A stretch of 64,000 nucleotides of DNA from Ruditapes philippinarum (taxonomy: Eukaryota): positions 124,001-188,000 of the forward strand of contig NW_026859211.1 in NCBI RefSeq assembly GCF_026571515.1, written 5' to 3'. The translations under genes and the position numbers were made by a program. This document shows positions 1,470 to 64,000 of the stretch, in pieces. Below the pieces are notes generated by a model. It did not search any database and was not told the origin of the DNA. It saw only the letters and a list, made by a program, of their open reading frames with translations. The stretch's first letter is position 1. Every line of letters begins with the position of its first letter.

Positions 1470-3212
1470 ATGGAGGTCTCGGGAAAGGTAACTTCGACAT
1501 CAAAGACGAACTTTAACCTCTACTGTATTACGTGTGATACAGATGGATTAAAGGAGCCAGCTTACGGATTTTGTCAAGACTGCCAAGAACATCTTTGCAA
1601 AAGTTGTTTTCAACATCATAGAAGGTCAAGGCTATCTAGAAACCACGTACTGCTTGATAAAGACGCTATGCCAACACAACAAACGACCGTTGACGACGTA
1701 AATGCAGACGTCATTACGGACAACTGTACCAACCATAAAGATAAACCACTGGAGTTCTATTGTAACAATCACGACACTGTGGCATGTTATGTCTGTGTTA
1801 CACTTGAACACAAACAATGTAAAGTTGACTATATTCCTGATGTTTCAGGTAACGTATCTGGCGAGTTGATAGATTTGAACAAAAAGATGAAAGATTTAGT
1901 CAAGAAATGTGAAAATAACATTATGAAGGCTTCAGCTGCTAAAAAGCAACTAGAACAAAAAGGTGTGAAAGTTGTTGAAGACATACGGCTCTTGAGAAAG
2001 GAAATAAACGACCGGTTAGATGAGATGGAATCTATGATGATAAAAGAAGCTGAAGCTGTTGTTAACACAGCAAACTACAAACTCGAGAATGTCAATTTTG
2101 CTTGCACAAAAATAAACGAGGAAGTGAAACTTTCACAGTCAATTCTTAATGCCCTGACGGAAGAAAAAAAGCAGAATCAGCTTTTTATTTTAATGAAGAA
2201 CGTCACACCACGTATGATGACACTGGAAAGTGAAGAAATGCAGATTGTCAAAGATAATATGACATATGACGACATTCAATTTGACCGAAACGAAAAGCTA
2301 CTTGATCAGCTGAAAAATGAGAAAAACTTTGGAAAAATTTCAACATACCGAAAACCATCAGAAGATACTGAAATATGTGCGAATTATGAAAGATCGCACA
2401 ACGTGACTTTTCCTTCTGATGAAAAAAGAAGCAATATCAGTGGGATGGTAATGGTTTCTGCCACACAAATGGTCATCGCTGATTCCGGTAATAAAAAAAT
2501 TAAAACGATAGATGTTATCACAGGATCGTTGTTGTCAGAGAAGATGTTGTTTTCAGCACCATACGATGTTATAAAAATCCCACAAAATAAGCTTGCTGTT
2601 GCATTATATCCTGAAAAATGTATCCAGATAATGTCTTATACTGATACAAGTTTATCTTTAGATCGTCGAATTAGTGTCGGTGAAAATGGTTTATGTGTAG
2701 CTTATTGTCAAGACAAGCTAGTAGTGGGCTGTAATAAGAATCAAGGGAAGCTGGTTATTCTGGATTTAGATGGAAATATGATGCAAGTGTTTGATGCTCC
2801 TGGATTGTTTTGTGGACCTGAAAAGATTGTTATCAGCAGTGATGAGAAGTTCATGTATGTGTCTGATTTCTTCCCTTTCAAAGATAGCAAGTGTATAAAG
2901 ATAGACTGGCAAGGTAATGTTGTACAAAGATTCAAGGATCAAGGATATAGAGGTCCTCAAGGAATACAGGAGTTGTCAGATGGTACGTTGTTAGTTTGCT
3001 TCAATGGCAGTGAAAAAATTGTTAGACTGTCGAGCAGCTTCAAGATATGTGAGATTACCGGATTAGAGAAAATAAACCTTTGTTCTCCACAGGCTGTAAC
3101 ATACAGTAAAAGGAATAACAAACTATATGTTAGTTGTTCTTCAACGCACGGACTTTATTCAAATGATACAATAAAAGTATTTAATGTGGGATGGATTGAT
3201 AGTAGGTTTTGA
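1470..3212 (+). CDS. RING-less TRIM-like protein, copy 1 (B-box1, B-box2, coiled coil, NHL-like beta-propeller), 580 aa
   Basis: B-box1 CITC..CQDC..CKSC..H..H; B-box2 CTNH..CNNH..CYVC..H..C; heptad-rich K/E/L region; propeller blades (MVIADSGNKKIK, MYVSDF, GPQGI, LYVSC). The ORF-track TTG start lies in the intron; the first ATG after the acceptor is 1470. Confidence 0.93.
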   Translation: MEVSGKVTSTSKTNFNLYCITCDTDGLKEPAYGFCQDCQEHLCKSCFQHHRRSRLSRNHVLLDKDAMPTQQTTVDDVNADVITDNCTNHKDKPLEFYCNNHDTVACYVCVTLEHKQCKVDYIPDVSGNVSGELIDLNKKMKDLVKKCENNIMKASAAKKQLEQKGVKVVEDIRLLRKEINDRLDEMESMMIKEAEAVVNTANYKLENVNFACTKINEEVKLSQSILNALTEEKKQNQLFILMKNVTPRMMTLESEEMQIVKDNMTYDDIQFDRNEKLLDQLKNEKNFGKISTYRKPSEDTEICANYERSHNVTFPSDEKRSNISGMVMVSATQMVIADSGNKKIKTIDVITGSLLSEKMLFSAPYDVIKIPQNKLAVALYPEKCIQIMSYTDTSLSLDRRISVGENGLCVAYCQDKLVVGCNKNQGKLVILDLDGNMMQVFDAPGLFCGPEKIVISSDEKFMYVSDFFPFKDSKCIKIDWQGNVVQRFKDQGYRGPQGIQELSDGTLLVCFNGSEKIVRLSSSFKICEITGLEKINLCSPQAVTYSKRNNKLYVSCSSTHGLYSNDTIKVFNVGWIDSRF

Positions 3213-4795
3213 ATGTGAATATATCCTGCAAGATGATACATTGAATGACAGATTAAATCAATATTGGGAGTATACTAAATTCAAAAACACATCTTCTATT
3301 CAAAGTTAAAAAAAACTCTAGAAAATGTATGATGAATGTAGATTATCAGTTTTAAATCCGAATAATTATTAAATAAAGATCATCATTTATATACTATGTT
3401 GAAGAGCAACCTATTAATTTGACTATTCAATTACTTATTTACTTGTCCAGTGAATATCTCCGTTTGTCTTTAATTTATAAGTCTGCTATGAAGAAATCTT
3501 AACTCTGTATTCCTTGCTGTTGTTTGTTTGTGTGTGTAAATAAAAATATTCTTATGTTGAAGTATACTTTATTATACTAAACAAATGTGGTTACTCTCTT
3601 TTAATTCCATGATAGAAAGGGAATAAGAATATTTCAATACATGATGGGCAGACAAATGTTTCATTTGTAATAATTACTAAGTGATTTTTGTGGACTACAT
3701 CAGTGATTTTGAAAATAATTTTACTATTTGCATTTCACATTGATTTATTTCAGCTGAATATGAAAAAAATGTTGACTATATATATTTATTAATATGTTAC
3801 AGACTCTTAACATTTAAAATGCTATATTTCATAGTGATAAAAATAATGATAAACAAAAGAAGGTTATCTTAATATTTGTGAGAGTAATTGGCATACTGTG
3901 AAGTGATTTTTGCAAATAATTTATGTATATAATAAACCCCATGTTTGTATGATGAGATGAATAAATTTGATTGATTTGATACGATTTGATTGGAATTACG
4001 TTTACATCCCTGGTTAATCATTTGTTTATTTAATTAAATTGTTTGGCTTATAACATCAGTGATACATAAACACTGAAATAAAATCAAATTTTAATAAATG
4101 ATAATTAAATACTGTTTTAAAACGATTAACAATTTATCATTTGGAATAACAAAATGGGAAGTAGATAATTTATTTAAGATATCAGACACGATTTATTTCG
4201 CGTCTAATTACGTTCTCTAATCTAATTAAATATTATGGTTTAAATGTCAAGGATTTACTGATAAATTGTTAATACATATAACTGGGTCTTTACAAATATC
4301 TAAACAAATGAAATGATAAAGTCAAAGTCATATGATTGGACGACTATATTTTTATATTTTATAAAGTGAAATACCAATCTAATCTACATCATTCTATCAC
4401 AAAATTAAGCAGCCGGACGGACACGTTGAAGAATCCTCACAAAAATGTACCGGTTGAAGAATTTTAAATTTCATTGCATAGATAAGACTTTCCACTATAA
4501 AACGTTTGTAACGGAACAACTACGAGTATAAATCCAAGAGACGAGTGAGGCATGAGCAAAATAACAAAATGTAGACATAACTGGGCTCTTTGACAATATC
4601 CTGTGTTGCTGGTTTTTTTGTTGGGGGATGGATTTTCATTGAATTTCGCATTTCCTTATTGATATTTGTTTTTATTATTTTCACGATAAAATTGAATTGA
4701 TGATAGATTCAGTGAGGGAATGTTTGTGAAAACAGTTATTGATAATATGTGTTGAACTCTTCTATTCAAAATTACAGTTCACGGTTCATCGTTAT

Positions 4796-4826
<31 letters not shown>

Positions 4827-4833
4827 AACAACA
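4796..4833. repeat. (CAA)n microsatellite
   Basis: Visible trinucleotide run. Confidence 0.9.
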
Positions 4834-16557: not shown

Positions 16558-17029
16558 GTGAGATCTTTAATAGATTTTTGTATTTATATTACAAAATATA
16601 TGTTTGGTTAATCAGAAAAGTTTGCTACTTTATTGAGAAACATTAGTTATTGTAACACTTAAGGTTTATAGGATAAGTTTGATAAAATAATACCTTTCAC
16701 ATGAAAATTTATGTAAAGTTTCTATGCGACAACGCCTATTGAGTATACGACATGTTTGGGCTCATTCTTTTGAAACAAAATATTGATTACTCTTTCATCA
16801 ACTAAAGTAAATTGATGTATTTAATTTGATGAATTAAGTATTTGTGCTTTTACATTAAGTTAAGGGTATTCAAACCGGGTTTCAATATCGCAATTTTGTT
16901 CCATATATTAAACACATATGTTCAATGCTGGATGTACATTTACACTGTAGCTTTATCTTGGCATTTTTTAAATATTAGTATGTTTTTGTAAGAAGGATTG
17001 ACAGTTATGAATTCTTGTCGTTTAGGAAA

Positions 17030-25519: not shown

Positions 25520-25585
25520 AGAGAGTTGTTTCCCTTGTATACCAGAATATTCAATCTTACGCGTTCCAAAGTTCTTGAAAGAAAG
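25520..25585 (+). other. Putative promoter/leader exon of copy 3
   Basis: gttgtttcccttg..cttacgcgttccaaagttc..GAAAG|GTAAGA (GT at 25586). Confidence 0.5.
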
Positions 25586-49344: not shown

Positions 49345-49695
49345 TTATCACACACCCGTGCCGATTTTGCGACTCCGTAAATATGGTATTGCACGGCCGT
49401 GCATATATTTTGACGTGACGTCATTAGCGTTATACAAACAAAGAGTAAAGACGCGCTAAATGTTAGCGTTATACTATAGGCGCGTCAATGAAAAATTATT
49501 CTTATTTCACTTTAAAAGGTCTTTATTTTGGGTATGTGATAAATAGAATATTAAATTCGTGTAAGTTCATTACTGAATTTATTGCACTCGTTGAATAAAA
49601 TAATATTATGCTCGCCAGAGGCTCGCATAATATAATTTTATTCAACTCGTGCAATAAATTCAGTATTGAACTTACACTCATTTAATATCCTCTAT
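49345..49695. mobile_element. Crypton-like insertion with ~150-bp palindrome
   Basis: Absent from block A. Arms tgtaagttcattactgaatttattgcac..ttgaataaaat and attttattcaa..gtgcaataaattcagtattgaacttaca around gctcgccagaggctcgc. No TSD seen. Confidence 0.65.
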
Positions 49696-50410
49696 ATAAT
49701 GCATGAAGAATTAATATCTATTTCCATTCTAACACGTCATGAAAAAATATAATAATTATTACATAGTTGGACTTTATGTTTGGTGATTAAATTTGTTTTC
49801 GCCTCAGAGTTTCCAATAGAAACGTTCTTTAAAGACTGTTCCAGTGGGTTGAAAAATCTTAAATCTACCGTGTGTAGAATAACAAATATTGAAAACGTTG
49901 ATTAAACTTTGTTTGTTTATTTTATTTCACTTTATATTTTTCAACCAAAATACAATGTAATAATAGTGAAATAAATGTGAAATTTAACTCGTTTGCGACA
50001 TTGAAATAGCGTTCTTGATTCGATTGTGTTTGCACGTGCTGTTTAGCGCTACATTGTGACGTCACGTAAACAAAACTGTAAACCTCTATACAGTGTTATC
50101 GACTGAATTAAAGATATTGGTGTTCGAATTAATTTTCTTAGTTAGACCATTTTCTTTCATTCTAAATAGTTTTCACAACAAAATCCGACAAAAAAATGTT
50201 TTTTTTTTATTTATCAGATTTTCAAACAAAAAGGCGCCGTCAATGTGTCGGTTTAAAAATACACAGAGAGGTAATAAGAACGACGAGTGCATTGTTGTAG
50301 AATAATGAACGCATCCGGCCTTCTTTGTTTATACAGAGAAATTTCCGATAGTGTTAGAATATGAAATTGTTACACCGCTGTCTAATTGAAGATGTCTTTT
50401 TCAGACAAAC

Positions 50411-52129
50411 ATGGATGAATCTCAAAAGATTATTGCTGAAACGAAGCAGAGCCTGGAATTATACTGCCTTCCATGTGATCAAGATGGTTTGAAAGTGTCG
50501 GTTCATGGATATTGTCGAGACTGCAAGGAACACCTCTGCAAAACTTGTTTTGAAAATCATACAAGGCCGAAGCCATGTAGGAATCACATTCTGCTTGATA
50601 TAAACGCCATGCCAGATCAACTAACGACCGTTAATATAAATGAAAAAGCATATTCCGAAAACTGCACCAACCATATGGATAAACCAATGGAGTTCTATTG
50701 TAACAATCACAAAACTACGGCATGCTATGTATGTGTTGCACTCGAACATAAAGAATGTAAAGCAGAATATATTCCTGATATGCCAGGAAACGTATCTGGT
50801 GAGTTCATAGATTTGGACAAAAAGATGGAAGTGCTAGTCAAGAAATGTGAAAGTAACATTATGAAGGCTTCAGCTGCTAAAAAACAACCAGAACAAAGTC
50901 ACGGAAAAGTTGTTGAGGACATACGGCTTTTGAGGAAGGAAATAAACGACCGTTTAGATCAGATTGAATCGGTGTTGATGACAGAAGCTGAAGCTGTTCT
51001 TAACACAGCAAACTACAAATTGGAGAATATTAAGGTTGCTTGCGAAAAATTAGCCGGAAAGGTGAAACGTTTACAGTCATTTCTTAACGCCTTGATGGAG
51101 GAAAGCAAGCTTAATAAGATTTTCACTGAATTGAAAAATGTCGGACCACATTTTATGACACTAGAAAGTGAAGAAATACAGATTGTCAAAGATAATATGG
51201 CATTTGACGACATTCGATTTGATCGTAACGGAAAGCTACTTGAGCAGCTGAAAAGTGAGAACAGCTTTGGAACAATTTCAACATACAGAAAACCATCAGC
51301 AGATACTGAAATATGTGTCAAATATGATAAATCGCTCAACGTGGAATTTCCTTCTGATAAATCGCAAAGTAATGTTGTTGGGATGGCAATGGTTTCTTCC
51401 ACGCGAATGATCATTGCTGATTATAATAACAACAAAATTAAAACAATAGATGTAGAAACTGGAACGCTGGTGTCAGAGAAAACCCTGACTTCAGCACCAC
51501 TCGATGTTACAAAACTTCCAGAAAATAAACTTGGTGTTGCTTTACCTAATGAAAAGTGTATCCAGATAATGTCTTATACCGATACAAGTTTGCCTTTAGA
51601 TCGTCGCATAGATGTGGGAGAAAAGTTTTTTTGTGTAGCTTATTGTCAGGACAAGCTAGTAGTGGGCAGAAATTGTAATCCAGGAAAGCTGGTTATTCTA
51701 GATTTAGACGGACAAATGATACAGGTGTTTGATACTCCTGGATTGTTTGATGGACCTAAAAGGATTGTTATCAGCAGAGATGAGATGTTCATGTATGTAT
51801 CTGATTACTCTCGTAGCAAAGATAGCAAGTGTGTAAAGATAGACTGGGAAGGTAATGTTGTGCAAAGATTTGAGGATCAAGGATGTGAAGGCCCTATAGG
51901 AGTACAAGAGTTGGAAGATGGTACTTTGTTAGTTTGCTTATACTCCAGTCGCAAAATTGTCAGATTGTCGAGCAGCTTCAAAGAATGTAAGATCACTGGA
52001 TTAGAGGACATAGACCTTTCCTATCAACAAATTGTAACATATAGTGAAAGTAATCACAAGTTATATGTTAGTTGTTCTTCTGAGCACGAAAATGTTTTAA
52101 AGCATACAATAGAAGTATTCAAAATGTGA
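50411..52129 (+). CDS. RING-less TRIM-like B-box/coiled-coil/NHL-propeller protein, copy 5, 572 aa
   Basis: Intact ORF after acceptor TCTTTTTCAG|. Zinc ligands retained; N-terminus divergent. Confidence 0.9.
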   Translation: MDESQKIIAETKQSLELYCLPCDQDGLKVSVHGYCRDCKEHLCKTCFENHTRPKPCRNHILLDINAMPDQLTTVNINEKAYSENCTNHMDKPMEFYCNNHKTTACYVCVALEHKECKAEYIPDMPGNVSGEFIDLDKKMEVLVKKCESNIMKASAAKKQPEQSHGKVVEDIRLLRKEINDRLDQIESVLMTEAEAVLNTANYKLENIKVACEKLAGKVKRLQSFLNALMEESKLNKIFTELKNVGPHFMTLESEEIQIVKDNMAFDDIRFDRNGKLLEQLKSENSFGTISTYRKPSADTEICVKYDKSLNVEFPSDKSQSNVVGMAMVSSTRMIIADYNNNKIKTIDVETGTLVSEKTLTSAPLDVTKLPENKLGVALPNEKCIQIMSYTDTSLPLDRRIDVGEKFFCVAYCQDKLVVGRNCNPGKLVILDLDGQMIQVFDTPGLFDGPKRIVISRDEMFMYVSDYSRSKDSKCVKIDWEGNVVQRFEDQGCEGPIGVQELEDGTLLVCLYSSRKIVRLSSSFKECKITGLEDIDLSYQQIVTYSESNHKLYVSCSSEHENVLKHTIEVFKM

Positions 52130-54169
52130 GATGGATAATTGGTATGTTTTAAATGTGAATATATGATGCAATGTGGTAAATTGTATATGATCAATATTAG
52201 ACACATTTTACCATTGGGAAAATACTAAATACAAAAACATATATCGTAATCAAAGTTGAGATGTCTTGGATATATTATAGATATCCATCCAGTTGTTTGA
52301 AAAATGTATAATAATGAAGGAGAATATCTTTTTTTTGAATAATTGATAAATGGTGATCATCATTTATATATCATTTTAAAGAACAACCATTTTTATTACA
52401 TATTTACTTGTCCATTAAATATTTCCTTTTCGTATTTAATTAATACTTCTGCTTCGAAGAATTTAATTGATATTTCTGCTTCGAAGAAGTGTAAAACCTA
52501 TATTTCTTGTCTTTTTTTGTAAATATCATTTTGTTTTATATTTAATTACTAAAAAAACTTAATTTTGCCTTTTTTGATTCCAAGGAGTAAGAATGTTTCA
52601 ATACATACAATAGATTTGTAATAATTACTTAATGAATAACGATGACTTTATCGGTGATTTTGAAAATAGTTTTACTATTTATATGCCACATGGTTTGATA
52701 TCAGCTGTATATGACAGCATTTTTTGACCTTCGATATTTATTATCTTGCAGAATCTTCACATTCTTAATGCTACATTTCATATTGATTGATAAAAAAATC
52801 TTTTTTTAAACAATAGGAGGTTTACATCATTATTTGTATATTATATTATGTATTGTGATTGTAAAATGGCATGCTATTTAGTGCTGTTTTTGCCAATAAT
52901 TACAGCGCATAAAACTCATGTTTGTATGATGTATGATGTACTGAGATGAATAAATTTGATTGATTTGATAAAATCTGAGTGAAATTTCGTTAACATGCCT
53001 GGTTAATAATTCGTTTATTCAATTCAATTGAGTTGTTTACAATAATTAAACATAAACACGTAAATAAAATAATATGTGAAAAATAAAAAAAGTAAATAAG
53101 GGTTTCACAACAATTAAAAGATTAAAAAATTGGATGTTAGTAATTTGTTAAGGTATCAGACACAATTAATTTCACGCCTAATTGCGTTGTAATAGCTAAG
53201 AAATATTATCATAATGATGTGTAGGATTCGCCAATTAAATCTGCATAACAGAGTCTTTACAAATATCTAAACTGATGAAATCTTTAATTAAAGTAATATA
53301 TTAAAGTAACTATAACAAGATCGCATTTGTATTAAAAAATGCTTTGCCACTAAAACAATGTAACAAAAGAAGTATACCCTTTTATTTGTATACATTTGAA
53401 CTTTGCCATAATGCAAGAGGATCTAGTGAATTTTGGGGTCAAGATCATAGTTGAGCATTTCAAATGAAAGACAATGTGCAGATGTGTCTCTATTCATATA
53501 CAAAGGCCATGGTGTAATAATTGATTCAAAATACAATAAGAATTTTGTTATTTACTGTATTATTTAGCTGTATTAAACTTTGAAATGCAGTTGCAGTAAA
53601 ATTCTTAAATGCTATATTTTTATTAATCTTTACCTATTTCTGAAAACATAAAAAAAACATTCATAATTTAAAATCATCATTACATAAATGTTGTAAATAA
53701 TAATTTCCTTATAATGTGCTCAGCTCTTTCATAAATATCCCTGCAAAGCAAACATTACTCTTTAGGTCATGATCTCTAATCATACCTAAAGATAGAATCT
53801 TTGAAAGCAAACATTTCTCTTGCCATTCAAGGCCAGCTGCATGATTATTAGATTAGAACGTGTTTATAAAGTAATAATACAAAGTCGGTAGATCTCACCA
53901 TATGTCGACATAAAGTATTTGAGTTGTAAAAAACATATGTTATGACTTTAATTTATTGTGGATACAATTAATATAAACGTAAAGCTTGACTTTTAATCAG
54001 AGAAAACGGTGATCTACTCTAAACAAGTTTAATATCGATTTCTTTGCGAAATGGGGTAATTAAATAATATGATAAAAACATATCAATAGCTGACGGAAAA
54101 TCAATCTTCCTTTTGAACATTGTAATTGATTGACATTTTTTTTCATTTGAGAAAATATTTATTCCTAAC

Positions 54170-54480
54170 AGAAATGGCTGGTTAAATAAATTGAAAACAT
54201 TAGATACATTAATAAATCAGTGGTACACAGGATACGAAAATAAATCTTATTGTAAAAGTATAATATTGATAGAAAAGAAATTTGAAATTTACAAAAATCT
54301 GCCTCTTGAAACTGGAAATTTGCATAGGTTTCCTTAAGAACATAGAAAATGCATTATTTGCAATCAAAACATAGGGGATGACTTTTATCTTCTATTATAT
54401 TGTCAAAATCTAACTATGAGAAGAAATCTCAATATAACAAAGTTTGAAAGTTTAATGAATACTAACCATTTTATGGTGTG
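54170..54480 (+). mobile_element. Decayed 3' end of a LINE ORF2
   Basis: LPLETGNLHRFP*EHRKCIICNQNIGDDFYLLLYC resembles the LINE C-terminal zinc-knuckle region LPIETGR..R.C..C..GDEFH.LL.C. Confidence 0.6.
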
Positions 54481-54808
54481 GTATGTAAACAATTTGCATA
54501 CTTTTTTGAATTTTGATTTTATTGTGTATTAATAACAATTTTACACAAATATTGTAAACCCAGAACAAACTTCAGACTTTTCTGTATGTTCATTAAGGGC
54601 TCATTAGTGTGATCAACTTTAAAAATTTACCAAATCAAAAATATCAATTTATCTTAAGTAGTGCTATTAATATCATTGTGTTACTTAAATTTCCATAATA
54701 AATATTGATAGATTCAACCAAAAGATGTAAGATGTGGTCCTTTATATTTGGTTAGATATTAATTGTTACACCACAGTCTAATTATATATTGTCTTCTTTT
54801 AGAAAGAA

Positions 54809-55880
54809 ATGGAGAAATGTTGGAAGACCACTATCGACACAAAGCAGAACCCGAAATTAAAGTGTCCTCCATATGATAAAGATGGTTTAGGCGAGTCGGC
54901 TCATGGATATTGTCAAGCATGTTTTCAGTTTGAAGGATCACTTAATGTGAAGTTCCCCTCTGATAAATCACAATGTAATGTCTGTGGGATAGTAATGATA
55001 ACAGCAACACAAATGATCGTTGACTACGGGAATAAGAAAATTAAAATGATTGATGTAAACAAAGGGACTCTGGTATCAGATGTATTTCTATCATCGGGAC
55101 CAGAAGATGTAATAAAACTTCCAGGAAATAACTTGCTGTTGCATTGCGGTTTGAAAACTGTATTCAAATTATTTCTTATACTGACCAAAGTTTGACACAA
55201 GATCTTCGTATAGATATTGGATATACATGTATATGTTATTGTGTAGCTTATTGTCAAGACAAACGAGTGGTAGGTTGTAATTCTAATCCAGGAAAGCTGA
55301 TTATTTTGTATTTACACAGAAATATCATACAGGTGTTTGATGCTCCTGGACTGTTTGATTCGCTTGCAAAGATTGTTATCAGCATTGATGAAAAGTTCAT
55401 GTATGTATCTGATTACTACTCTTTAAGCAAGTTTATGAAGCTGGACTGGCAAGTTAATGATGTACAAATATATGAAGATCCAGGATATTTGTTTGTTTGA
55501 TTGGGTTTTACGTCACACCGACAGAGTATAGGCCATATGGCGACGTTCCAGCTTTACTGGTGGAGGAAGACCTCACGTGCACTTCCGTGCATTATTTCAG
55601 GCACGAACGGGCACCTTAATAGAACCACCGACGTTCCGTAAGCTAGCTGGATAGCTTCATCACATGAAAGAATCCAAAGTCCCTGTCGGGATTCGAACCC
55701 GCAGCGGTGAGGGGCAAGTGGTTTAAAGTCAACGACCTTAACCACTCGGCCACGGACGCCCCAAGATCCAGGATATGAAAGACCAACCGGAATACAAGAG
55801 ATGGAAGATGGTACGTTATTAGTATGCTACAGAGACAGTAGCAATATTATAAGATTGTCGGCCAGCTTCAAGAAAATATA
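54809..55880 (+). pseudogene. TRIM-like pseudogene, copy 6
   Basis: GYCQACFQ joined directly to FEGSLNVKFPSDK (B-box2 and coiled coil deleted), frameshift near 55133, SINE insertion, last blade missing. Confidence 0.88.
55489..55762 (-). mobile_element. Full-length tRNA-derived SINE with 14-bp TSD
   Basis: A box TGGCCGAGTGG, B box GGTTCGAATCC, (CAAA)n tail. TSD AAGATCCAGGATAT at 55475-55488 and 55763-55776. Resembles bivalve V-domain/RUDI-type SINEs (from memory). Confidence 0.92.
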
Positions 55881-58158
55881 TGAGAATTTGATTTATAGAT
55901 ATACAAAACAAGACTAGCTACGAAACAAAGATATTGAACAATTCAGACATGATGGTCAAGGTCAAGTTCATGAAGTTTCATTATGTTTCATATAGCAATG
56001 AGATCTTGACCTTAAGCACGGTCTTACATATAAAATTGAACCTTGATATCAGCTTACCTTGATAATTTGACAAAGTGACCTACTTTCTTGTCCTTTGATG
56101 TACAGTTAGAAATTTGGAATATTTGCACAGTTTTAAATGTTAATTTGAACTTTGATATCATCTGACCTAGATAATTTGATATAGTGACCCACTTTCTTGT
56201 CCTTTGATGCATAAAATTTGGACTATGTGCACAGTTTCATATGCAAAACAGAACATTGAACATTATGGAAATGATTCATACGTTAACAAAACAAGTGTGA
56301 CTAGACCTATCTAATGAAATGAAAAAAACGAAAACAGAAAATTTAATTAATTTTTCTAAAGATTTATTTAAACCTTTTATTTGTTTAACTGCAGAAAACG
56401 TAAACCTGTAGAAAACGTAAAAAATGTCGAGCGTTGCCCCGTTAGTCGGTAGCTCTTTTTAGTTGCTAGCTTTGAAACAGTAAGGATATTGCAGATTTGA
56501 TTTGATTTATGTTATGTGTTGCAAACGTCTGTTTTAAAGAAAAACAACAATAAAAAACAGGCTTATCTTTGGATATCTAATAATGACTGTATATGAAACA
56601 TTTCAGTAAAAAATGGATTGATTTATATACGCCTTAATGTTTTGTCTGCCTATGTCATGTACAAATACAGATACCTCAAGAAAATATAAACCATGTTAGC
56701 AAAGATGTGAGTGGTGGTTTACAGGCTATGGATACAGCATTAACAACCCAGCAATCACAAGAGGTTCAAGCTAACTCTGCTATAGTGGAAATGCCAGGTG
56801 GTGCACCTCTTACCATCAGTGGAGGCCGTTTAGTCCTGGCAAACTGCCCCACTGACAACTGATCCAACCAGTAAGTGTTTGTGAATATTTCATTATGCCC
56901 TCCTTCGAAAATGAGGCGGTATATTGTTATGTTTGTCTCTTCGTCGGTAAACTACATGGCTTTGCACTTCTTATCTTAAAAAAATATTTATCACAAGGTA
57001 TAGGTCATAACTACTATTGATTTTGGGGTCACTAGGTCAAAAGTGAAGGTGACAGGGACATTAAATGTCAGAATGGTTGCCGCTCATTATACTTATGATA
57101 GCTTCCATTCAGTTTCAGGTCATATATTGGTCATTATGTTTCTTTTTTCATAACTAAAAACAATTCCATGTACCCATTTATGGCATGTTTCTATAACAAA
57201 ATTACCTATAATATGAGTTAAAGGCTAGAAAGTCGGTCAAATGTGCCGTGTCTTGTTTCCCTTTGTGATCACCTGTTGTCTTGTCCAACTTATAACCTGC
57301 CTTGAGCTGTCTGTCATTATCTTATCCAGAATTTCTCTTAGCATCATTATATCTTTAACCTCATAGTACATTTTGACAAAATTTTGAAGAAATGATTTTA
57401 GGTGAGGTGTCTGGAGCTTAAAATAAACTTTAAAAATGAAATCTTTAAAAATCTTCTAAGAATATAATGCACAGATCTAAAGATAATGCCTATAGCATAT
57501 CATTATAACCTTTTGGTCCTCTACAAAAGTTATATATAATAAGTAATGCACCTTGGATCAAATCTGGCTGTTCTTTAAGGGTCACTTAGTATGGAAAAAG
57601 CCTTGTATATAAAAACAGATTTACATCATCTTCTCTGAAACTACATATCCTTATGCTTAGATATTTGGTGTGAAGCTTTGCCAAATGAACTCTACAGAAT
57701 TATATGTATCAAGCCGCTTAAATAAAAAATGTTCTGAATCATGGGACCATTTTTTTTAGCTCCACTATTCAACGAAGGGAGAGCTAATGTATCCATCCCG
57801 GCATCCGCGTCACACTTTCTTTGTGTTTTCATCTCCAAGGCTACTGAAGGGAGTGGGTTGAAAGTTCACACACTTACTTTATAGTATAACTGGAAATCAT
57901 TGCATAAGGCACATTACATTGACAGAAATATGGCCCTATTTGAACTTATAAAAAATTCTACATTATCCAAGCTCTTGGGTTACTTTCAAGCACTGAGAAT
58001 AGTCAAGTTTGCTGTCCTACTCAGAACTGACAGCTCTTGTTTCATACTGAGATTAGGAAATGATAAATATTTTATGATTTTCTGCCGATATCATGCAACA
58101 GTTACTGATGAACTTAAGGGATATTTTGGATTATTTTATTTTGGACGCATTCTATGCA

Positions 58159-59082
58159 ATTTATTGTCCCCCGCCTTTTCGAAGAAAAAAGGGGGATATA
58201 GAAATAGGCTCCGTCCATCTGTCCGACCGTCCGTCACACTTTCGTGTCCGGTCCATAACTTTGTCATTTATCAAAGGAATTTGAAATAACTTGGCACAAA
58301 TGTTTGTTATAATAAGACAATGTGTCATACGCAACAACCAGACCCCTACCTTCAGGGTCAATGTAGCTTTTGTTCATTCAAGGTCAACATTGTCTATTTG
58401 AGGGTATATGTCGTGTCTGTTCCATAACTTTCTTATCTTTGTAGGGATTTTGTAAATATTTGCCAGAATTGTTCACAATAATGAAATGATATGTCATGCG
58501 CAACAACCGGTTACCTACCTCCAAGGTCAAGGTCACACTAAGAGGTCAAAGATTTACATAGTCTGTTATAGGGTATATTTTGCGTCCAGTCCATAACTTT
58601 TTCATACATCAATGGATTTTTAAATACTTTGCACAAATAATCACAATAATAAGACGATATGTCAGGCGCAAAACATTGGTCCCTACCTCCAAGGTCACAC
58701 TTAGAGGTCAAAGATTAACATAATCTGCTATAGGGTATATTTTGTGTCTGATCTATAACTTCTTCATAGTTCAAGGGATTTTGAAAAAACTTGGCACAAA
58801 CAATTATAAGACGATATGTCATGCACAACACCAGCACCACAATCTCCAAGGTCAAGGGCACACTTAGAGGTCAAAGCTTAACATTATAGATTTTTAAATT
58901 CTGTGTTTCATTTTATTTCTTTAATAAATTTATTGATGCATTTGCAGATCTAGCATTGATCATAATATTGAACTGAAAGTCCTGAGATCCATACATCAAT
59001 CTTTTGAAATAGCACAATTTTATGCTTTATATAAAACTTCCCTGAGACGGGGAACGTTGGTAACTCTGTTACAAATTCTTGT
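58159..59082 (+). mobile_element. HINE-type element (counterpart of 34729-35660)
   Basis: Near-identical to the block A copy. Confidence 0.7.
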
Positions 59083-59101
59083 GTAAATTGTAAGTGTTTG
59101 T

Positions 59102-59291
59102 GAGTGGTTTAGGTCGTTGACTTCAAACCACTTGCCCCTTACCGCTGTGGATTCAAATCTTGACAGGGACTTGAGATTCTTTCATGCGAGGAAGCTATCT
59201 AGCTAGCTTATGGAATGTTAGTGGTTCTGCTCAGATGCCCGTGTGTGCCTGAAATAATGCGTGGAAGCGTTCCTGAGGTCTTCCTCCACCC
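59102..59291 (+). mobile_element. tRNA-derived SINE, truncated (counterpart of 35680-35868)
   Basis: Near-identical to the block A copy. Confidence 0.8.
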
Positions 59292-62233
59292 GTCACCCCC
59301 AAAAAGTAAATTTTAAGGACATAATGCTTAGCTAGCTTAGATTATCTATCTATATCAATTGATATTTCAAAGCATCTGCCCAAGCAGCCTTAGATTATAT
59401 TTATGCAATAATGTATAACTTCAAAATAATTGTCAAATTGTCAAATTGCATTTCTTATTTCAGCTGGAATGATGTCAATACCTGTCTCAATATATCAAAG
59501 TCTTATGGCATCCCAGCAACAGGGAACACTGGATCTGGGGTCAACTGGTCAGGTGGTGTTCACACAGGCAACTACCAACCAGCAAGTCCAGCAGCCTCAG
59601 ATTATCACACAGCAGCAACTGGAGCAGCTGCAGCAGCAACAAACCCTCCAACAGCATTTAGAGGCTCACCAGGAGATTGTACATGTAGGGGAACCTCTAG
59701 GTGTACAGTTAAATCAACAACATATACAAGGTGCCAGTGGGGATGGATCAGATAGCTTGATAGCTACAGGAACTGTTGCATGTAAAACTGAGACTTCATA
59801 GTTCACAAACTGTTTGGATATTTTAATATGTATTGTATATTTGTATATAAGAGCCAATGTGTTCAAATTATGAAAATGTGACAGAAAGGGAAAATAACAC
59901 CCCCAACTTTGTAATGTTCTGTCATATAAATGTATCTATTGAAATGAAATAAGTCTCTGAGGTTTTAGGTGTTGAGTAAGGGGATATTGATCTTTACTGC
60001 ACTAAATATCTTAAATAGAATTGTTCATCTTTCAGTGTGGACAAGTCCATTCATAAATTATAGGGAAAATTTCCAAATAAGTATTAACTGAATAGTGTAA
60101 AGTGCACAACATGTTGTGTATTCTTATCTTTGTTTGAACTGGTACCAGGTAAGCGTTACATGTATATATGCTGAAAAACTGTACAAAGCTTGCAAGAACG
60201 ACATACACTGCTGGACATTGGAAACGCATCCATTGTTTTTTACCTTTTTTATAAGGAAGGGCGTATTTGATTTTTTTGCAAACTGAAGGACACATGTCTA
60301 TACTTCTTATTTAAAATTGTTACTGTCACGACTCTATTGTTGAGTTTAAGTAAAAAATGTGTGGTAATCCGCATTTACAAAAATCAAAACCGACCTGTTT
60401 TATGAGCATAGTCCCAATCACAGTCATGATCTCACTGGGATTGTTTAAGATCATATCCTTCCTCTACGACGAGGACGTGTCGGGGACGTTGGTGGCGTTT
60501 TGTATAAAACATTTTATATATTATTTCAACTAGGCTTATAAATGAGGCGTTCAGTATCTCGTGTATGACGCATTAAGCTGAATGCTAGAAAGACACCTGA
60601 CTTATTGCAGCAATTGGATTATTATTCCATTCTTGCACTGAGGCTTGTTGAAGTTGTGCTTCATTTTGTCGAGATGGTTTACGTGTATTAATTCTACCGC
60701 CGAAATCGTCCCATACATGCTATATTGGTGACATGTCTGGTGACATCGCTCGCCAGTCTAGCACATTAATTTGATTATATATTTTCATTATCAACACTAT
60801 GTTTAGACCTGACCAATATAAAGCTTAAGTCATCAGCTAATGTTGGTATTTGTCTTTATTCACAATTCCTTTCAACAGCTCCAACCCAATTTTTATTCAA
60901 AACATAGTGGTCCTTTACACAAGTCATATAAATTATCATTGAATTCTGTATATGTAGGTTACTTGAACTTAAGTTAAAAGAATTGAAATCGTGGAGAATC
61001 TCTTTGTCAGTATCTAGAAAGAAGCCAGACCTTATATATATGGTAAATAACATGGCTAAGTGAGTCATACATAAATGCCCTTGGGATAAAATTTACCCAC
61101 ACTTCTGATACTTTTCTAAGTCTTACATAATATAACAATTTGTAATCCTCTTGCCTTTGTATATAAATGTCCCTGGATTCAGATATTGTCCCATTTTGTG
61201 GTCCTGTTTCAATTTATAGAGAACAAAAACGATTGAAACTTAAAACCAAGGAGTTTGTCTATAATATGTTACATAACTTTGCCAAGAGTTAGTCTTATAC
61301 ATGTCATCTTTAATTGTTTTCAAAATAATCAGAATCAAGCTTTATTGACTTTAATACACTTATATTATGCGAAATATTTATTTGCCCATTATTTTGATTT
61401 ATATGTCATGAATGTGACCTATTAATTCGAAATAAACTATTCTATTCTATTCTACAAATCGTGGATCTTGCATAAAAAGTCCAATTAGCTTCTTTGATTT
61501 AGTAATAGATTATTTATAGAGTTTTAGCATGGATGAATATTGAATACCCAACAGGGTACATAGTATATGTTTGTCAAAATTCTTAAATGTATCGGAGATG
61601 TAGATATGTTATCTATGTATCTGAATGTGTAAATAAACTTTTGATTTATTTATTTATTTTATTTATATTTCATTGCATACGATCAAATTGTATGTCAAAG
61701 TTTCAATGACAGGCATGTATATTATGTACATATTAATGTTCCTTAACCAATTACTTCATAATTTCTCAAAATGCTGCAATTTCTCAATGGATTGAGATAG
61801 AGCCAAAAGCTTTCAGCGTTGCTTTCACGTTACCTTAAGGTCGACCTGAGGGCATTTAAGCTTCTCACTAGTCCAAAATTTTCGTGTAGATGAGGGGGTC
61901 AGAAGATCCCTTTCAAACCCCCCAAGCAGATGCTCTTGTACCCCTTTTTATCTATTTGATAGCGGATGGCGCCGAAAAACTGACTACTTTTTTTACAAGT
62001 ATTTGGGGTCTAAATAGGTATTTTTTTCCACTATTTGAGGCCTCAAAGGGGTGGTGAAAAGACGTCTATATGAAGTAACGGTTATTATTTATAATTTAAA
62101 TGATGACACACTTTGTTTTAATTAATCTTTTTGTAAACATTACAAAACATGTTTATTTTTAACATGAACAGCAGTTTTTTATGAAACATTGTACTTAAAA
62201 ATCTATCTAAATTTGCTTTCAAGGGAGATAATG

Positions 62234-62328
62234 TCACTGTCATATTTGAAAGACAACATTACGCCCCCTGCGAACTAGAATTTAAACTTCCGCGTTCCAA
62301 GGTTCGGGTTGAAACGGACTTAAAAAAG
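62234..62328 (+). other. Putative leader exon of copy 7
   Basis: Homologous to 39297-39394. GT at 62329; acceptor at 62921. Confidence 0.55.
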
Positions 62329-62924
62329 GTGAGGATTTTCTACAGCTTTTCAGTATAATATTGCAAAATATATATGTTTAAGCAGGATGAGTTTACTAGA
62401 TAAAGTGGGGATAAATAGTTATACGAGCATTATTTTAATTTTAAGATAAGTTATATGTGAGATATAGTGAAACAACTGAATAATATAAATCGGATCACGT
62501 GACTTCTCTTTGTTTTCGTAAAACACAAAACAAAACCGCTTTACCTTTAGTTAAATTTAATTAATACTAAATAAACGTTTACAATAAAAGTTCAATGAAA
62601 TATTCAAGATGAAAAACTATAAAGTTAAACTTAATAATAAATGTGACACTAGTTAGCTATGTGACACTAGCTAGCTGATAAATATGGGACGTGTTTAAGC
62701 ATGCAAACTAAATTCTTTCAAGATCGCATTGAGAAATGCATATTGATATATTGGATTACAAACAGTTGATACGATGTATTTTATGTAAGTCATAAAGGTT
62801 TAAACATATTCATTTCCCATGAATATATATAGTAATAAATATTTATCTTTTTTTTTCATATTGTTCAGAACTTTGATATGTCGTCGGCGGAAAATTGATT
62901 AGTAATTTATTTCCATTTAAGAAA

Positions 62925-64000
62925 ATGGAGGTATCTGGAAAGGTAACTTCGACATCAAAGACGAACTTTAACCTCTACTGTATTACGTGTGATACAGATG
63001 GATTAAAGGAGCCAGCTCACGGATTTTGTCAAGACTGCCAAGAACATCTTTGCAAAAGTTGCCTTCAACATCATAGAAGGTCAAGGCTTTCTAGAAACCA
63101 CGTATTGCTTGATAAAGACGCAATGCCAACACAACAAACGACCATTGACGACGTAAATGCAGAAGTAATTACGGACAACTGTACCAACCATAGGGATAAA
63201 CAACTGGAGTTCTATTGTAACAATCACAAAACTGTAGCATGTTATGTCTGTGTTACACTTGAACACAAACAATGCAAAGTTGATTATATTCCTGATGTTT
63301 CAGGTAACATATCTGGCGACTTGATAGATTTGAACAAAAAGATGAAAAATTTAGTCAAGAAATGTGAAAATAACATTATGAAGGCTTCAGCTGCTACAAA
63401 GCAACTAGAACAAAGTCGTGGAAAAGTTGTTGAAGACATACGACTCTTGAGAAAAGAAATAAACGATCGGTTAGATCAGATGGAATCTATGATGATAAAA
63501 GAAGCTGAAGCTGTTGTTAACACAGCAACCTACAAACACAAGAATATCACAGTTGCTTGTGAAAAAATAGCCGAGGATGTGAAACGTTCACAGTCATTTC
63601 TTAATGCCTTGAAGGAAGCAAACAAGAATAATAAGCTTTTCATTGAATTGAAAAATGTCAGACCTCGTTTGATGACACTGGAAAGTGAGGAAATACAGAC
63701 TGTTAAAGAGAACATGACATATGACGACATTCAGTTTGACCGGAACGAAAAGCTGCTTGATCAACTGAAAAGTGAGACAATCTTTGGAACAATTTCCACA
63801 TACAGAAAATCATCAACAGATATTGAAATATGTGTCAAATATGAAAGATCGCTCAACGTGACATTTCCTTCTGATGAAGAACAAAGTGATGTTTTTGGGA
63901 TGGTAACGATTTCTGCTTCACACATGATCTTAGCTGACTACGGAAATAAAAAAATTAAAATGATAGATGTAGACACAGGAACGCTGGTGTCTGAGAAGAC
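62925..64000 (+). CDS. RING-less TRIM-like protein, copy 7 (5' part, runs off the window; not in the ORF track)
   Basis: Manually translated open frame MEVSGKVTST...ADYGNKKIKMIDVDTGTLVSEK with no stop to the window end. Confidence 0.9.
   Translation, partial: MEVSGKVTSTSKTNFNLYCITCDTDGLKEPAHGFCQDCQEHLCKSCLQHHRRSRLSRNHVLLDKDAMPTQQTTIDDVNAEVITDNCTNHRDKQLEFYCNNHKTVACYVCVTLEHKQCKVDYIPDVSGNISGDLIDLNKKMKNLVKKCENNIMKASAATKQLEQSRGKVVEDIRLLRKEINDRLDQMESMMIKEAEAVVNTATYKHKNITVACEKIAEDVKRSQSFLNALKEANKNNKLFIELKNVRPRLMTLESEEIQTVKENMTYDDIQFDRNEKLLDQLKSETIFGTISTYRKSSTDIEICVKYERSLNVTFPSDEEQSDVFGMVTISASHMILADYGNKKIKMIDVDTGTLVSEK

What the first reader, a model, noticed from the sequence alone, without database searches (positions are those of the whole stretch)
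1470..64000. Tandem RING-less TRIM-NHL array with hypervariable propeller loops: candidate diversified innate-immune receptor repertoire
Seen: scaffold positions are conserved while short loops differ in nearly every copy (copies 1/2/4/5). Examples: ADSGN/ADNAN/ADYDN/ADYNN; ALYPE/ALRDE/ALPGE/ALPNE; GENGLC/GDKCNC/RELCNC/GEKFFC; FCGPEK/FDGPGQ/FDRPKN/FDGPKR; SDFFPFKD/SDYYYWKGH/SDYSRYIA/SDYSRSKD; LCSPQA/IYYPKT/LFFPNA/LSYQQI; SSTHGLY/SSQQERG/SSDKVWG/SSEHENV. Copies 1 and 4 are identical over their first 72 aa yet differ at all of these loops. Known: in NHL propellers (TRIM71, Brat) the b-c and d-a loops form the top, ligand-binding face, and TRIM-like expansions occur in molluscs. Inference: a constant oligomerisation module displays a variable, aromatic-rich recognition surface, as with TRIM5 SPRY loops or fish finTRIMs. 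Without a RING the proteins would be sensors or adaptors rather than stand-alone E3 ligases.
Basis: partly seen in the sequence, partly recalled or inferred. Interest (0 to 1): 0.85.

Follow-up and report, generated by a model that had tools for sequence, protein, structure and literature searches.

The report
Clam RING-less TRIM-NHL gene array
A Manila-clam locus carries seven tandem copies of a Brat-like gene (two zinc B-boxes, a dimerising coiled coil, an NHL propeller, no RING) whose scaffold is conserved. One face of the propeller changes at or above the neutral rate, which fits a diversified intracellular recognition repertoire, though an immune role is untested.

Summary
The window (Ruditapes philippinarum-type clam, contig C7698) carries seven same-strand copies of a single-ORF gene: four intact, one intact but running off the window end, and two pseudogenes. 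The family has at least 77 matches genome-wide.

Each protein is B-box1, B-box2, a roughly 150-residue coiled coil and a six-bladed NHL propeller. The best structural matches are Mei-P26, TRIM2, TRIM3, Thin and Brat, at TM about 0.8. No RING is found within 74 kb, in the RefSeq models of the paralogues, or in 72 of 73 homologues.

dN/dS there is 0.9-1.07, against 0.29-0.48 for the other face, the strands and the N-terminal half.

Standard site models strongly favour a class with omega above 1 in the propeller of three independent clades, and never in the N-terminal half. Stricter tests weaken this: p is about 0.01 in two clades and there is no signal in the third. Diversifying selection is therefore likely but not proven.

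Paralogues recombine. Copy 2 appears transcribed. An immune role is inference only.

The scan already found this family on other pieces of the same genome (s1-803846 and others).

The parts
1470..3212 (+). Copy 1: intact single-ORF gene, 580 aa, B-box1/B-box2/coiled coil/NHL propeller
   Evidence: ORF. Pfam PF22586, PF00643 and a weak PF01436. AF2 model with pLDDT 86.
1521..1649 (+). Copy 1 B-box1 (aa 18-60), ANCHR-like B-box
   Evidence: PF22586, E=3.8e-7. The Cys/His ligands C19, C22, C35, C38, C43, C46, H50 and H59 are invariant or nearly so in 48 homologues.
1719..1820 (+). Copy 1 B-box2 (aa 84-117)
   Evidence: PF00643, E=2e-7. C86, C98, H101, C106, C109, H114 and C117 are invariant in 48 homologues.
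1833..2318 (+). Copy 1 coiled-coil region (aa 122-283): a long helix 130-231, then return helices 235-263 and 275-283
   Evidence: AF2 secondary structure. Aligns to the TRIM28/KAP1 B-box and coiled-coil region, E=2e-24. Predicted antiparallel homodimer, ipSAE 0.67 against a best control of 0.06.
2370..3197 (+). Copy 1 NHL-type six-bladed propeller (aa 301-576), 24 strands. Candidate selected codons across the three clades, in copy-1 numbering: 314, 363, 365, 406, 422, 451, 468-470, 489, 491, 494, 495, 513, 538, 541, 559, 560, 562-564.
   Evidence: AF2 pLDDT above 90. Foldseek hits Mei-P26, TRIM2, TRIM3, Thin and Brat NHL domains at TMt 0.75-0.82. Profile hits to NHL domains at E of 1e-20 to 1e-17. 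Site posteriors.
17030..18772 (+). Copy 2: intact gene, 580 aa, the most divergent of the MEVSG-type copies. Appears transcribed.
   Evidence: ORF. Contigs of two probable RNA runs cover only 17025-18841 and nothing upstream.
17024..17025 (+). Predicted 3' splice acceptor (pyrimidine tract plus AG) 4 nt before the ATG of copy 2. Equivalent AGs lie at 1465-1466 (copy 1, 3 nt before the ATG) and 50403-50404 (copy 5, 6 nt before).
   Evidence: Sequence context. A run X1 contig begins at 17025. The differing distances to the ATG mean no common reading frame could enter from an upstream exon (inference).
28611..30255 (+). Copy 3: copy-5-like pseudogene, or an unpolished assembly stretch. Frame broken many times.
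   Evidence: tblastn hits fall in three frames. 77.7% nucleotide identity to copy 5 with 112 gap openings.
39970..41691 (+). Copy 4: intact gene, 573 aa. Its first 72 aa are identical to copy 1.
50411..52129 (+). Copy 5: intact gene, 572 aa, MDESQ-type N-terminus
54809..55872 (+). Copy 6: pseudogene lacking about aa 39-300, with frameshifts in the propeller
   Evidence: tblastn fragments in different frames. Short ORFs at 54809-55195 and 55144-55500.
62925..64000 (+). Copy 7: 5' part, aa 1-358. The ORF continues beyond the window to 588 aa.
   Evidence: tblastn. Full ORF in L005.
24498..64000 (.). Two copies of a roughly 23-kb segmental duplication unit. Unit 1 is 24498-47394, holding copy 3 and copy 4. 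Unit 2 runs from 47395, holding copies 5, 6 and 7.
   Evidence: Self-blastn shows collinear blocks at 80-95% identity.

Best explanation
This is a lineage-specific tandem array of a clam-expanded, cytosolic, RING-less TRIM-NHL ('Brat-like') gene family.

**Shown or predicted here.**
- Each gene has one coding exon, probably preceded by a non-coding 5' exon.
- It encodes B-box1, B-box2, a TRIM-type coiled coil predicted to form an antiparallel homodimer, and a six-bladed NHL propeller.
- The N-terminal half and the propeller scaffold are under purifying selection. The N-terminal half is also exchanged among paralogues by recombination or gene conversion.
- The top face of the propeller evolves at or above the neutral rate. 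This face comprises the B-C and D-A loops and the first residues of the A strands. A few codons per clade show omega of 2.5-6.

**Inferred mechanism.** A constant dimeric rod displays two variable propeller faces that each bind a different ligand. Protein ligands are more likely than RNA. Lacking a RING, the proteins would act by sequestering or blocking the target, by assembling into higher-order structures, or by recruiting another effector. They would not ubiquitinate a target themselves.

**Inferred driver.** An arms race, most plausibly with intracellular pathogens. This step is inferred, not shown.
For: **Architecture.**
- Pfam finds two B-boxes, and the zinc ligands are invariant in 48 homologues.
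- The AF2 model has pLDDT 86 with 24 propeller strands.
- Foldseek's best hits are TRIM-NHL domains, E=8e-15 and TMt 0.8.
- A profile search hits KAP1 B-box/coiled coil at 2e-24 and the Thin, TRIM3, TRIM2, TRIM71 and Brat NHL domains at 1e-20 to 1e-17.

**RING-less.**
- No RING consensus in the six-frame translation of the window and its flanks.
- No tblastn hit to a bivalve TRIM71-like RING within 74 kb.
- 72 of 73 homologues carry no RING Pfam domain, and RefSeq paralogues of 572-585 aa start at the same Met.

**Dimer.** ipSAE 0.67 against a best control of 0.06. Contacts such as 147 with 212 and 176 with 183 show an antiparallel arrangement.

**One-face variability.**
- NG86 dN/dS is 0.91 for the top loops, 0.29 for the bottom loops, 0.38 for the strands and 0.34 for the N-terminal half.
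- In 13 independent close pairs the values are 1.07, 0.46, 0.48 and 0.38.
- pN of the top loops divided by pS of all other codons is 1.22, bootstrap 95% interval 1.02-1.45.

**Site models** (own code; M0 lnL reproduces IQ-TREE).
- Propeller, M1a vs M2a: 2dlnL of 94.6 in clade A, 65.0 in clade B and 23.3 in clade C. The N-terminal half gives 0.0 in all three.
- Clade A also gives 123 for M7 vs M8 and 80 for M8a vs M8.
- With a separate tree for each propeller third, 2dlnL is 29, 43 and 40.
- Every site with posterior above 0.9 lies in a top loop or within the first four residues of an A strand. None lies on the bottom face.

**Recombination.** AU tests reject the N-terminal tree on propeller data (p=7e-6) and the reverse (p=2e-41).

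**Expression.** Contigs from two studies cover only the copy 2 ORF.
Against: **Omega above 1 is not robust.**
- With class-specific synonymous rates, a 'fast neutral' class fits almost as well. The LRT for omega above 1 drops to 6.09 (p=0.014) in clade A and 6.69 (p=0.0097) in clade B, and is about 0 in clade C.
- Hot spots chosen in two clades and scored in the third give omega of 0.9-1.9, not significant.
- The same test in close pairs gives pN/pS of 0.89, with locally raised apparent pS of 0.235.
- Recombination among paralogues is known to inflate site-model tests.

**The face assignment is indirect.** It rests on strand order and the NHL motif register. I could not inspect the 3D coordinates.

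**Function and expression are thinly supported.**
- There are no data on ligand, induction, tissue or localisation.
- The runs showing expression are only guessed to be RNA.
- The raw RNA reads were too shallow to define the 5' exon.
- The dimer pass may reflect the model's memory of solved TRIM coiled coils.
Confidence: 0.6

Rival explanations
1. Relaxed constraint only. The top-face loops have no sequence-specific function in this family and drift neutrally. The apparent omega above 1 comes from locally raised substitution rates (micro-conversion between diverged paralogues, multi-nucleotide mutations, loop misalignment) together with recombination.
For: - Top-face omega is close to 1, at 0.91 and 1.07.
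- The dual-rate null, with omega fixed at 1 and a 3-6x faster class, fits better than M2a.
- Clade C shows no residual signal.
- Cross-validated hot spots give pN/pS of 0.89 with raised pS.
- Recombination is demonstrated.
Against: - The top-loop class includes invariant scaffold residues yet still averages omega of about 1. Its pN exceeds gene-wide pS by 1.22x, 95% interval 1.02-1.45.
- The dual-rate LRT remains nominally significant in two clades.
- The same loops are hot in three independently duplicated clades.
- The N-terminal half recombines as much but shows no signal.
- Dozens of intact ORFs keep a propeller whose canonical binding face would, on this reading, be useless.
Confidence: 0.25
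2. Diversified RNA-binding regulators. As in Brat, LIN-41/TRIM71 and Mei-P26, the NHL top face binds RNA. The paralogues would have diverged to bind different RNA motifs, whether endogenous mRNAs, transposon RNAs or viral RNAs.
For: - The architecture matches Brat, which has two B-boxes, a coiled coil and an NHL domain but no RING (my own knowledge of Brat).
- The closest folds are RNA-binding NHL domains, including the Brat-RNA complex 5ex7.
- The variable sites lie on the face that binds RNA in those proteins.
Against: - Net charge of the top-face loops ranges from -12 to +5 among paralogues and is mostly negative or neutral in clade A. It is not the uniformly basic surface of RNA-binding NHL domains (the comparison with known RNA binders is from my own knowledge).
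- Sequence identity to those domains is only 14-19%.
Confidence: 0.1
3. Substrate adaptors for housekeeping proteostasis or signalling. The RING-less proteins would heterodimerise through the conserved coiled coil with a RING-bearing TRIM, or would scaffold endogenous partners. Paralogue divergence would then reflect subfunctionalisation rather than conflict.
For: - The coiled coil is conserved, homogenised and predicted to dimerise.
- RING-bearing TRIM71-like proteins exist in bivalves (P0073).
Against: - Subfunctionalisation does not predict that one face evolves at or above the neutral rate in recent duplicates.
- It also does not predict the high turnover seen here, with pseudogenes sitting among intact copies.
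Confidence: 0.05

Closest known systems
Drosophila Brat (Brain tumor), a RING-less TRIM-NHL protein
   Same: Same domain order: B-box1, B-box2, coiled coil, six-bladed NHL propeller, with no RING and no filamin domain. The Brat NHL domain is among the best structural matches (1q7f and 5ex7, TMt 0.76-0.78; profile E=1e-17).
   Different: Brat is a conserved single-copy developmental regulator with a basic, RNA-binding top face (my own knowledge). Here there are at least 77 copies per genome in tandem arrays. The top face is hypervariable and not uniformly basic.
TRIM2, TRIM3, TRIM71/LIN-41, Mei-P26 and Thin/TRIM32 (class VII TRIM-NHL E3 ligases)
   Same: B-box, coiled coil and NHL propeller. 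These are the best fold matches, at TMt 0.80-0.82.
   Different: They carry a RING, and most carry a filamin domain. They are slow-evolving single genes. The clam family lacks both domains and its top face evolves fast.
TRIM5alpha/TRIM22 and fish finTRIM/btr expansions (B30.2/SPRY loops under positive selection)
   Same: Tandemly duplicated TRIM-type genes. A constant B-box and coiled-coil dimerisation module carries a C-terminal recognition domain whose surface loops diversify (PMC2657112 and PMC2151084, listed).
   Different: The recognition domain here is an NHL propeller, not B30.2/SPRY, and there is no RING. Antiviral activity and induction are documented for those vertebrate families and are untested here.
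Bivalve 'TRIM2/3/71-like' and B-box gene expansions
   Same: A B-box orthogroup is expanded in bivalves, at 8.9 genes per bivalve against 0.1 in other groups (PMC8382680). Many 'TRIM2/3-like' transcripts track Perkinsus tolerance in oysters, and that paper cites reports of induction by OsHV-1 (PMC9892467). RefSeq labels several paralogues 'TRIM71-like'.
   Different: Those papers report counts and expression. In the held library I found no paper holding TRIM, NHL, B-box and Crassostrea together. None of the bivalve papers I opened mentions an NHL domain.

Membership tests
TRIM / RBCC (tripartite motif) family | N-terminal RING finger | tested here: not met
   No RING Pfam hit in any of four proteins. 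No RING consensus in six frames of the window and flanks. No tblastn match to a bivalve TRIM71-like RING within 74 kb. RefSeq paralogue models of the same length start at the same Met.
TRIM / RBCC (tripartite motif) family | B-box zinc finger or fingers | tested here: met
   PF22586 (B-box1 type) and PF00643 (B-box2) are above their cut-offs in copies 1, 2 and 4. In copy 5, PF22586 is not reported and PF00643 scores 23.9 against a cut-off of 24.1. The ligand Cys and His are invariant or nearly so in 48 homologues.
TRIM / RBCC (tripartite motif) family | Coiled coil forming an antiparallel dimer | tested here: met
   AF2 helix 130-231 with return helices. Aligns to the KAP1 B-box and coiled-coil region, E=2e-24. 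Predicted antiparallel homodimer, ipSAE 0.67 against control 0.06; this is a prediction only and may reflect memory of solved TRIM structures.
TRIM-NHL subfamily (class VII; Brat, LIN-41/TRIM71, TRIM2/3/32, Mei-P26) | C-terminal six-bladed NHL beta-propeller | tested here: met
   24 strands at pLDDT above 90. Foldseek top hits are all TRIM-NHL domains, E=8e-15 and TMt about 0.8. hmmsearch E of 1e-20 to 1e-17. The Pfam NHL repeat is only weak, reaching 21.3 bits in one blade of copy 1.
TRIM-NHL subfamily (class VII; Brat, LIN-41/TRIM71, TRIM2/3/32, Mei-P26) | Basic, RNA-binding top surface (a feature of the RNA-binding members) | tested here: inconclusive
   Net charge of the top-face loops is -12 to +5 across 31 paralogues. 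The surface was not computed in 3D and no binding assay was done.
Diversifying antiviral TRIM repertoires (TRIM5/22, finTRIM) | Tandem, lineage-specific expansion with pseudogenes | tested here: met
   Seven copies in 64 kb, two of them broken. At least 77 matches genome-wide in several arrays.
Diversifying antiviral TRIM repertoires (TRIM5/22, finTRIM) | Positive selection concentrated in the recognition-domain loops | tested here: inconclusive
   Strong by M1a/M2a, M7/M8 and M8a/M8 in three clades, with sites confined to the top face. Weaker once synonymous-rate variation is allowed: p=0.014, p=0.0097 and no signal. Cross-validated pN/pS is 0.89. Top-loop pN over gene-wide pS is 1.22, interval 1.02-1.45.
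Diversifying antiviral TRIM repertoires (TRIM5/22, finTRIM) | B30.2/SPRY recognition domain | tested here: not met
   The C-terminal domain is an NHL propeller.
Diversifying antiviral TRIM repertoires (TRIM5/22, finTRIM) | Induction by infection, or demonstrated restriction activity | not testable with these tools
   The only evidence obtained is that copy 2 appears transcribed. No challenge data were examined.

The most novel reading that the evidence does not exclude
Venerid clams use the NHL propeller as a hypervariable intracellular recognition domain, where vertebrates use SPRY and many immune receptors use LRR. Dozens of RING-less B-box/coiled-coil/NHL paralogues would form antiparallel dimers through a coiled coil kept uniform by gene conversion, and perhaps mixed heterodimers. 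Their top faces, diversified by selection and by segment exchange, would each recognise a different pathogen protein. That would be a germline-encoded, combinatorial anti-pathogen repertoire of a kind not described for NHL domains.
Probability: 0.3. Interest if true: 0.8.

Novelty: new variant of a known kind. Interest (0 to 1): 0.55.

Why it matters
Bivalves lack adaptive immunity, yet they carry very large, poorly annotated expansions labelled 'TRIM-like', and these recur in disease-resistance transcriptomics. What such proteins recognise, and with which surface, is unknown.

This result points to a specific, testable surface: about 20 codons on the B-C and D-A loops of an NHL propeller. NHL domains have so far been known as conserved RNA- or protein-binding modules in developmental regulators.

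If the diversification is adaptive, it would add the NHL propeller to the short list of folds that animals use as variable recognition domains. It would also give clam aquaculture candidate resistance loci. If the diversification is merely relaxed constraint, it is a caution that standard site-model tests overstate selection in recombining multigene families.

Tried and rejected
1. **Literature.** Eight searches found general reports of bivalve B-box and TRIM expansions and expression (PMC8382680, PMC9892467). No held paper has TRIM, NHL, B-box and Crassostrea together, and two opened papers matched only on 'trimAl'. This shows absence from the held library only.
2. **Other architectures carrying this propeller.** A propeller-only homologue search (residues 296-580) returned only the same B-box family. 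It gave no CARD, Death or TIR fusions and so no guilt by association.
3. **RING search.** Both the regular-expression scan and tblastn were blank. A very divergent RING, or one split across exons, would be missed.
4. **5' exon from RNA reads.** The two raw-read RNA runs gave at most about 2x depth on copy 2 and no joints. A few reads at 15001-15167 and 16003-16169 might be 5' UTR exons, but this is unproven.
5. **Cross-clade validation of hot spots.** This did not confirm omega above 1. I report it as evidence against.
6. **Are contigs C13462 and C8923 allelic haplotigs of this array?** Only the copy-5-like gene reaches 94.7% identity and the rest are 82-91%, so this stays unresolved.
7. **3D mapping of sites.** Faces were assigned from strand order and the NHL motif register.
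8. **Pfam on four other window ORFs** (36010-36390, 22683-23108, 14677-14979, 57900-58289). Nothing reached a cut-off.

Full report
**What is there**

The window is G000:C7698:124001-188000, from a 1.4-Gb assembly of 15,874 contigs. The closest public proteins are RefSeq models of Ruditapes philippinarum, followed by Mercenaria and Mya.

Four long + strand ORFs stand out: 1440-3212, 17015-18772, 39940-41691 and 50411-52129. A tblastn search with copy 1 adds two more:
- a fragmented copy at 54809-55872;
- a copy starting at 62925 that runs off the window. Read on in locus L005, it is an intact 588-aa ORF.

Self-comparison reveals a seventh copy at about 28611-30255. It is 77.7% identical to copy 5, with 112 gap openings. 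It is either a decayed pseudogene or an unpolished stretch of assembly.

The right-hand 40 kb consists of two copies of a roughly 23-kb duplication unit. No other family member lies on this contig.

**The observation**

Copies 1 and 4 are identical for their first 72 residues.

**Architecture**

- Pfam finds an ANCHR-like B-box (PF22586) and a B-box (PF00643), a weak NHL repeat in one blade, and no RING.
- In a 48-sequence family alignment the zinc-binding Cys and His of both B-boxes are invariant or nearly so.
- AlphaFold2 on that alignment gives mean pLDDT 86. The model shows two small zinc-finger folds and a helix spanning residues 130-231. Return helices follow at 235-263 and 275-283. After these come 24 beta strands at pLDDT above 90, which is six four-stranded blades.
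- Foldseek's best PDB matches are the NHL domains of Mei-P26, TRIM2, TRIM3, Thin and Brat (E of 8e-15 to 5e-12, TMt 0.75-0.82, rmsd about 3 Å).
- A sequence profile of the family hits the KAP1/TRIM28 B-box and coiled-coil region (E=2e-24). It also hits the Thin, TRIM3, TRIM2, TRIM71 and Brat NHL domains (1e-20 to 1e-17).

The proteins are therefore true B-box/coiled-coil/NHL proteins. From my own knowledge, the domain order is that of Drosophila Brat.

**Absence of a RING**

- No RING consensus appears in any frame of the window or of 10 kb of flanks.
- tblastn with the RING-bearing N-terminus of a Saccostrea TRIM71-like protein (P0073) matches only the B-box1 of each copy across 74 kb.
- Of 73 homologues, all within a length range that would include a RING-bearing form, only P0073 has a RING Pfam domain. 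RefSeq paralogue models of 572-585 aa start at the same Met.
- Each ATG is preceded by a pyrimidine tract and an AG, 3 nt upstream in copy 1, 4 nt in copy 2 and 6 nt in copy 5. These differing distances cannot all keep one frame. I infer that the upstream exon is a non-coding 5' UTR exon.

**Expression**

Twenty public runs held part of the copy 2 stretch. Their shares of 0.14-0.29 are close to the fraction of the query that is ORF.

When laid on the stretch, contigs of runs X1 and X2 (two studies) cover 17025-18841 only. They give nothing upstream and little downstream, and one contig starts at 17025, at the predicted acceptor. A DNA run would cover the whole stretch, so these are most likely transcripts. 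The tool, however, only guesses that these runs are RNA.

Two raw-read RNA runs were too shallow to define a 5' exon, at no more than about 2x with 4-6% of each run read.

**Which face varies**

In a propeller, successive loops alternate between the two faces.

With this register, all seven quoted loops are B-C or D-A loops, which by convention form the top face. This is inferred from topology. I could not inspect the coordinates.

| Class | Mean entropy, 12 paralogues | dN/dS, 12 paralogues | pN/pS, 13 independent close pairs |
|---|---|---|---|
| Top loops (B-C, D-A) | 1.23 | 0.91 | 1.07 |
| Bottom loops (A-B, C-D) | 0.56 | 0.29 | 0.46 |
| Strands | 0.61 | 0.38 | 0.48 |
| N-terminal half | 0.55 | 0.34 | 0.38 |

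dS is similar across classes among the 12 paralogues. In the close pairs, pS is 0.143 for the top loops against 0.124 for the rest of the propeller.

**Tests for positive selection: standard models**

No PAML or HyPhy was available, so I wrote Goldman-Yang site models. The M0 likelihood reproduces IQ-TREE's (-5285.07).

For the propeller of the 12-gene clade that includes the window copies:
- M1a vs M2a gives 2dlnL of 94.6, with omega2 of 4.6 at 6.3% of codons.
- M7 vs M8 gives 123.
- M8a vs M8 gives 80.
- The N-terminal half gives 0.0, 0.7 and 0.0.

Giving each third of the propeller its own tree still yields 29, 43 and 40.

Two other, independently duplicated clades behave the same way:
- the C7715 array gives 65;
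- the clade drawn from C14098, C5393 and three other contigs gives 23;
- both give 0 in the N-terminal half.

Sites with posterior above 0.9 are 314, 363, 365, 406, 422, 451, 468-470, 489, 491, 494, 495, 513, 538, 541, 559, 560 and 562-564. All lie in top loops or within the first four residues of an A strand, and none lies on the bottom face. The Fisher test for top loops against the rest gives p=0.0014, 0.041 and 0.00086.

**Stricter tests**

These temper the result:
- **Synonymous-rate variation.** A model that gives each class its own synonymous rate lets a 'fast neutral' class (omega of 1, rate 3-6x) fit better than M2a. The remaining LRT for omega above 1 is 6.09 (p=0.014) in clade A, 6.69 (p=0.0097) in clade B and about 0 in clade C.
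- **Cross-validation by likelihood.** Hot spots chosen in two clades and scored in the third give omega of 0.9-1.9, not significant.
- **Cross-validation in close pairs.** The same sites give pN of 0.209 and pS of 0.235, a ratio of 0.89. About half of the apparent synonymous changes come from codons that differ at two or three bases, where path-averaging is unreliable.
- **A class defined in advance.** Taking the whole top-loop class, conserved scaffold residues included, and using the synonymous divergence of all other codons as the neutral yardstick gives pN/pS of 1.22. The bootstrap 95% interval is 1.02-1.45, and 1.4% of replicates fall at or below 1.

My reading is as follows. The top face has at least been released to the neutral rate while the rest of the protein is constrained. 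Diversifying selection on a subset of its codons is likely, at roughly two chances in three, but it is not proven.

**Recombination**

The N-terminal and propeller trees are mutually incompatible. ΔlnL is 109 (p-AU=7e-6) and 191 (p-AU=2e-41). Among copies 1, 4 and 7, dS is 0.10-0.20 in the N-terminal half against 0.25-0.31 in the propeller.

The 'constant' module is therefore partly kept uniform by sequence exchange. It is also a known cause of false positives in site models.

**Oligomerisation**

Two copies of residues 80-300 are predicted to pair, with ipSAE of 0.67 against a best control of 0.06. The three runs agree on at least 95% of contacts, and partner pLDDT is at least 84.

In the tool's calibration, the pass mark was reached by 21 of 30 proteins solved as pairs of one chain and by 0 of 23 solved as single chains. 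On eukaryotes it was reached by 17 of 29.

Contacts such as 147 with 212, 143 with 219 and 176 with 183 show an antiparallel arrangement, as in solved TRIM coiled coils. The pass may therefore come from the model's memory of those structures.

**Ligand type**

Net charge of the top loops ranges from -12 to +5, and is mostly negative or neutral in the window's clade. This does not resemble the uniformly basic RNA-binding faces of Brat or LIN-41 (my own knowledge).

Aromatic residues are modestly enriched at candidate sites, at 15-17%. I therefore favour protein ligands over RNA.

The N-terminus begins MEVSGKVTSTSK and shows no hydrophobic stretch. I ran no signal-peptide predictor, but I take this to mean a cytosolic protein.

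**Comparison with what is known**

- Bivalve B-box and 'TRIM-like' expansions are on record (PMC8382680).
- 'TRIM2/3-like' transcripts are associated with Perkinsus tolerance in oysters, and that paper cites reports of induction by OsHV-1 (PMC9892467).
- Diversifying selection on TRIM recognition loops is classic for B30.2/SPRY in TRIM5 and TRIM22, and in fish finTRIMs (PMC2151084 and PMC2657112, listed).
- I found no held paper describing one-face hypervariability of an NHL propeller in a RING-less B-box family.

I class this as a new variant of a known kind.

**Earlier findings in this scan**

The scan has already flagged this family on other pieces of the same genome. One follow-up there reached the same reading (s1-803846; also s1-794088, s1-803914 and s1-803922).

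The window has no N runs. No spliced model had to be joined.

Noticed in passing
window 19126-19158: A 33-base stretch downstream of copy 2 has very high depth in all four runs (a summed contig word-depth of 1,276-5,941 in its bin, about 55x and 150x in the raw RNA reads). Unrelated sequence continues on both sides of it. It looks like a short motif shared by many transcripts or repeats, possibly the core of a transposon or SINE.
   Followed up: no
window 36010-36390 and 59430-59801 (also 35991-36344 and 59411-59755 in another frame): A Gln-rich ORF of 123-126 aa occurs once in each copy of the 23-kb duplication unit. It has no Pfam family above the cut-off. It may be an exon fragment of a Q-rich transcription-factor-like gene, or chance.
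   Followed up: partly
window 27947-30980: Copy 3 and its flanks differ from the copy 5 unit by many 1-bp insertions and deletions, about 6 gap openings per 100 bp. That is twice the density in the neighbouring duplicated intergenic DNA. This could be raw long-read error left unpolished rather than real decay.
   Followed up: partly
G000:C13462 (54.7 kb) and G000:C8923:62604-64316: Two other contigs carry related arrays. On C13462 the copy-5-like gene is 94.7% identical to window 49696-52230, while its neighbours are only 82-91% identical to window copies. This is either a very divergent haplotig (structural and allelic diversity at the locus) or a paralogous array.
   Followed up: partly
window 15001-15167, 16003-16169, 16337-16503: A few raw RNA-seq reads of run X21 lie 0.5-2 kb upstream of copy 2. 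They may mark non-coding 5' exons of copy 2 or unrelated transcription. No joint reads were reported.
   Followed up: no
window 6317-6644, 6954-7272, 22338-22667: A dispersed repeat of about 330 bp, with local copies 95% identical and a third copy at 89%. Probably a transposon fragment between the genes.
   Followed up: no
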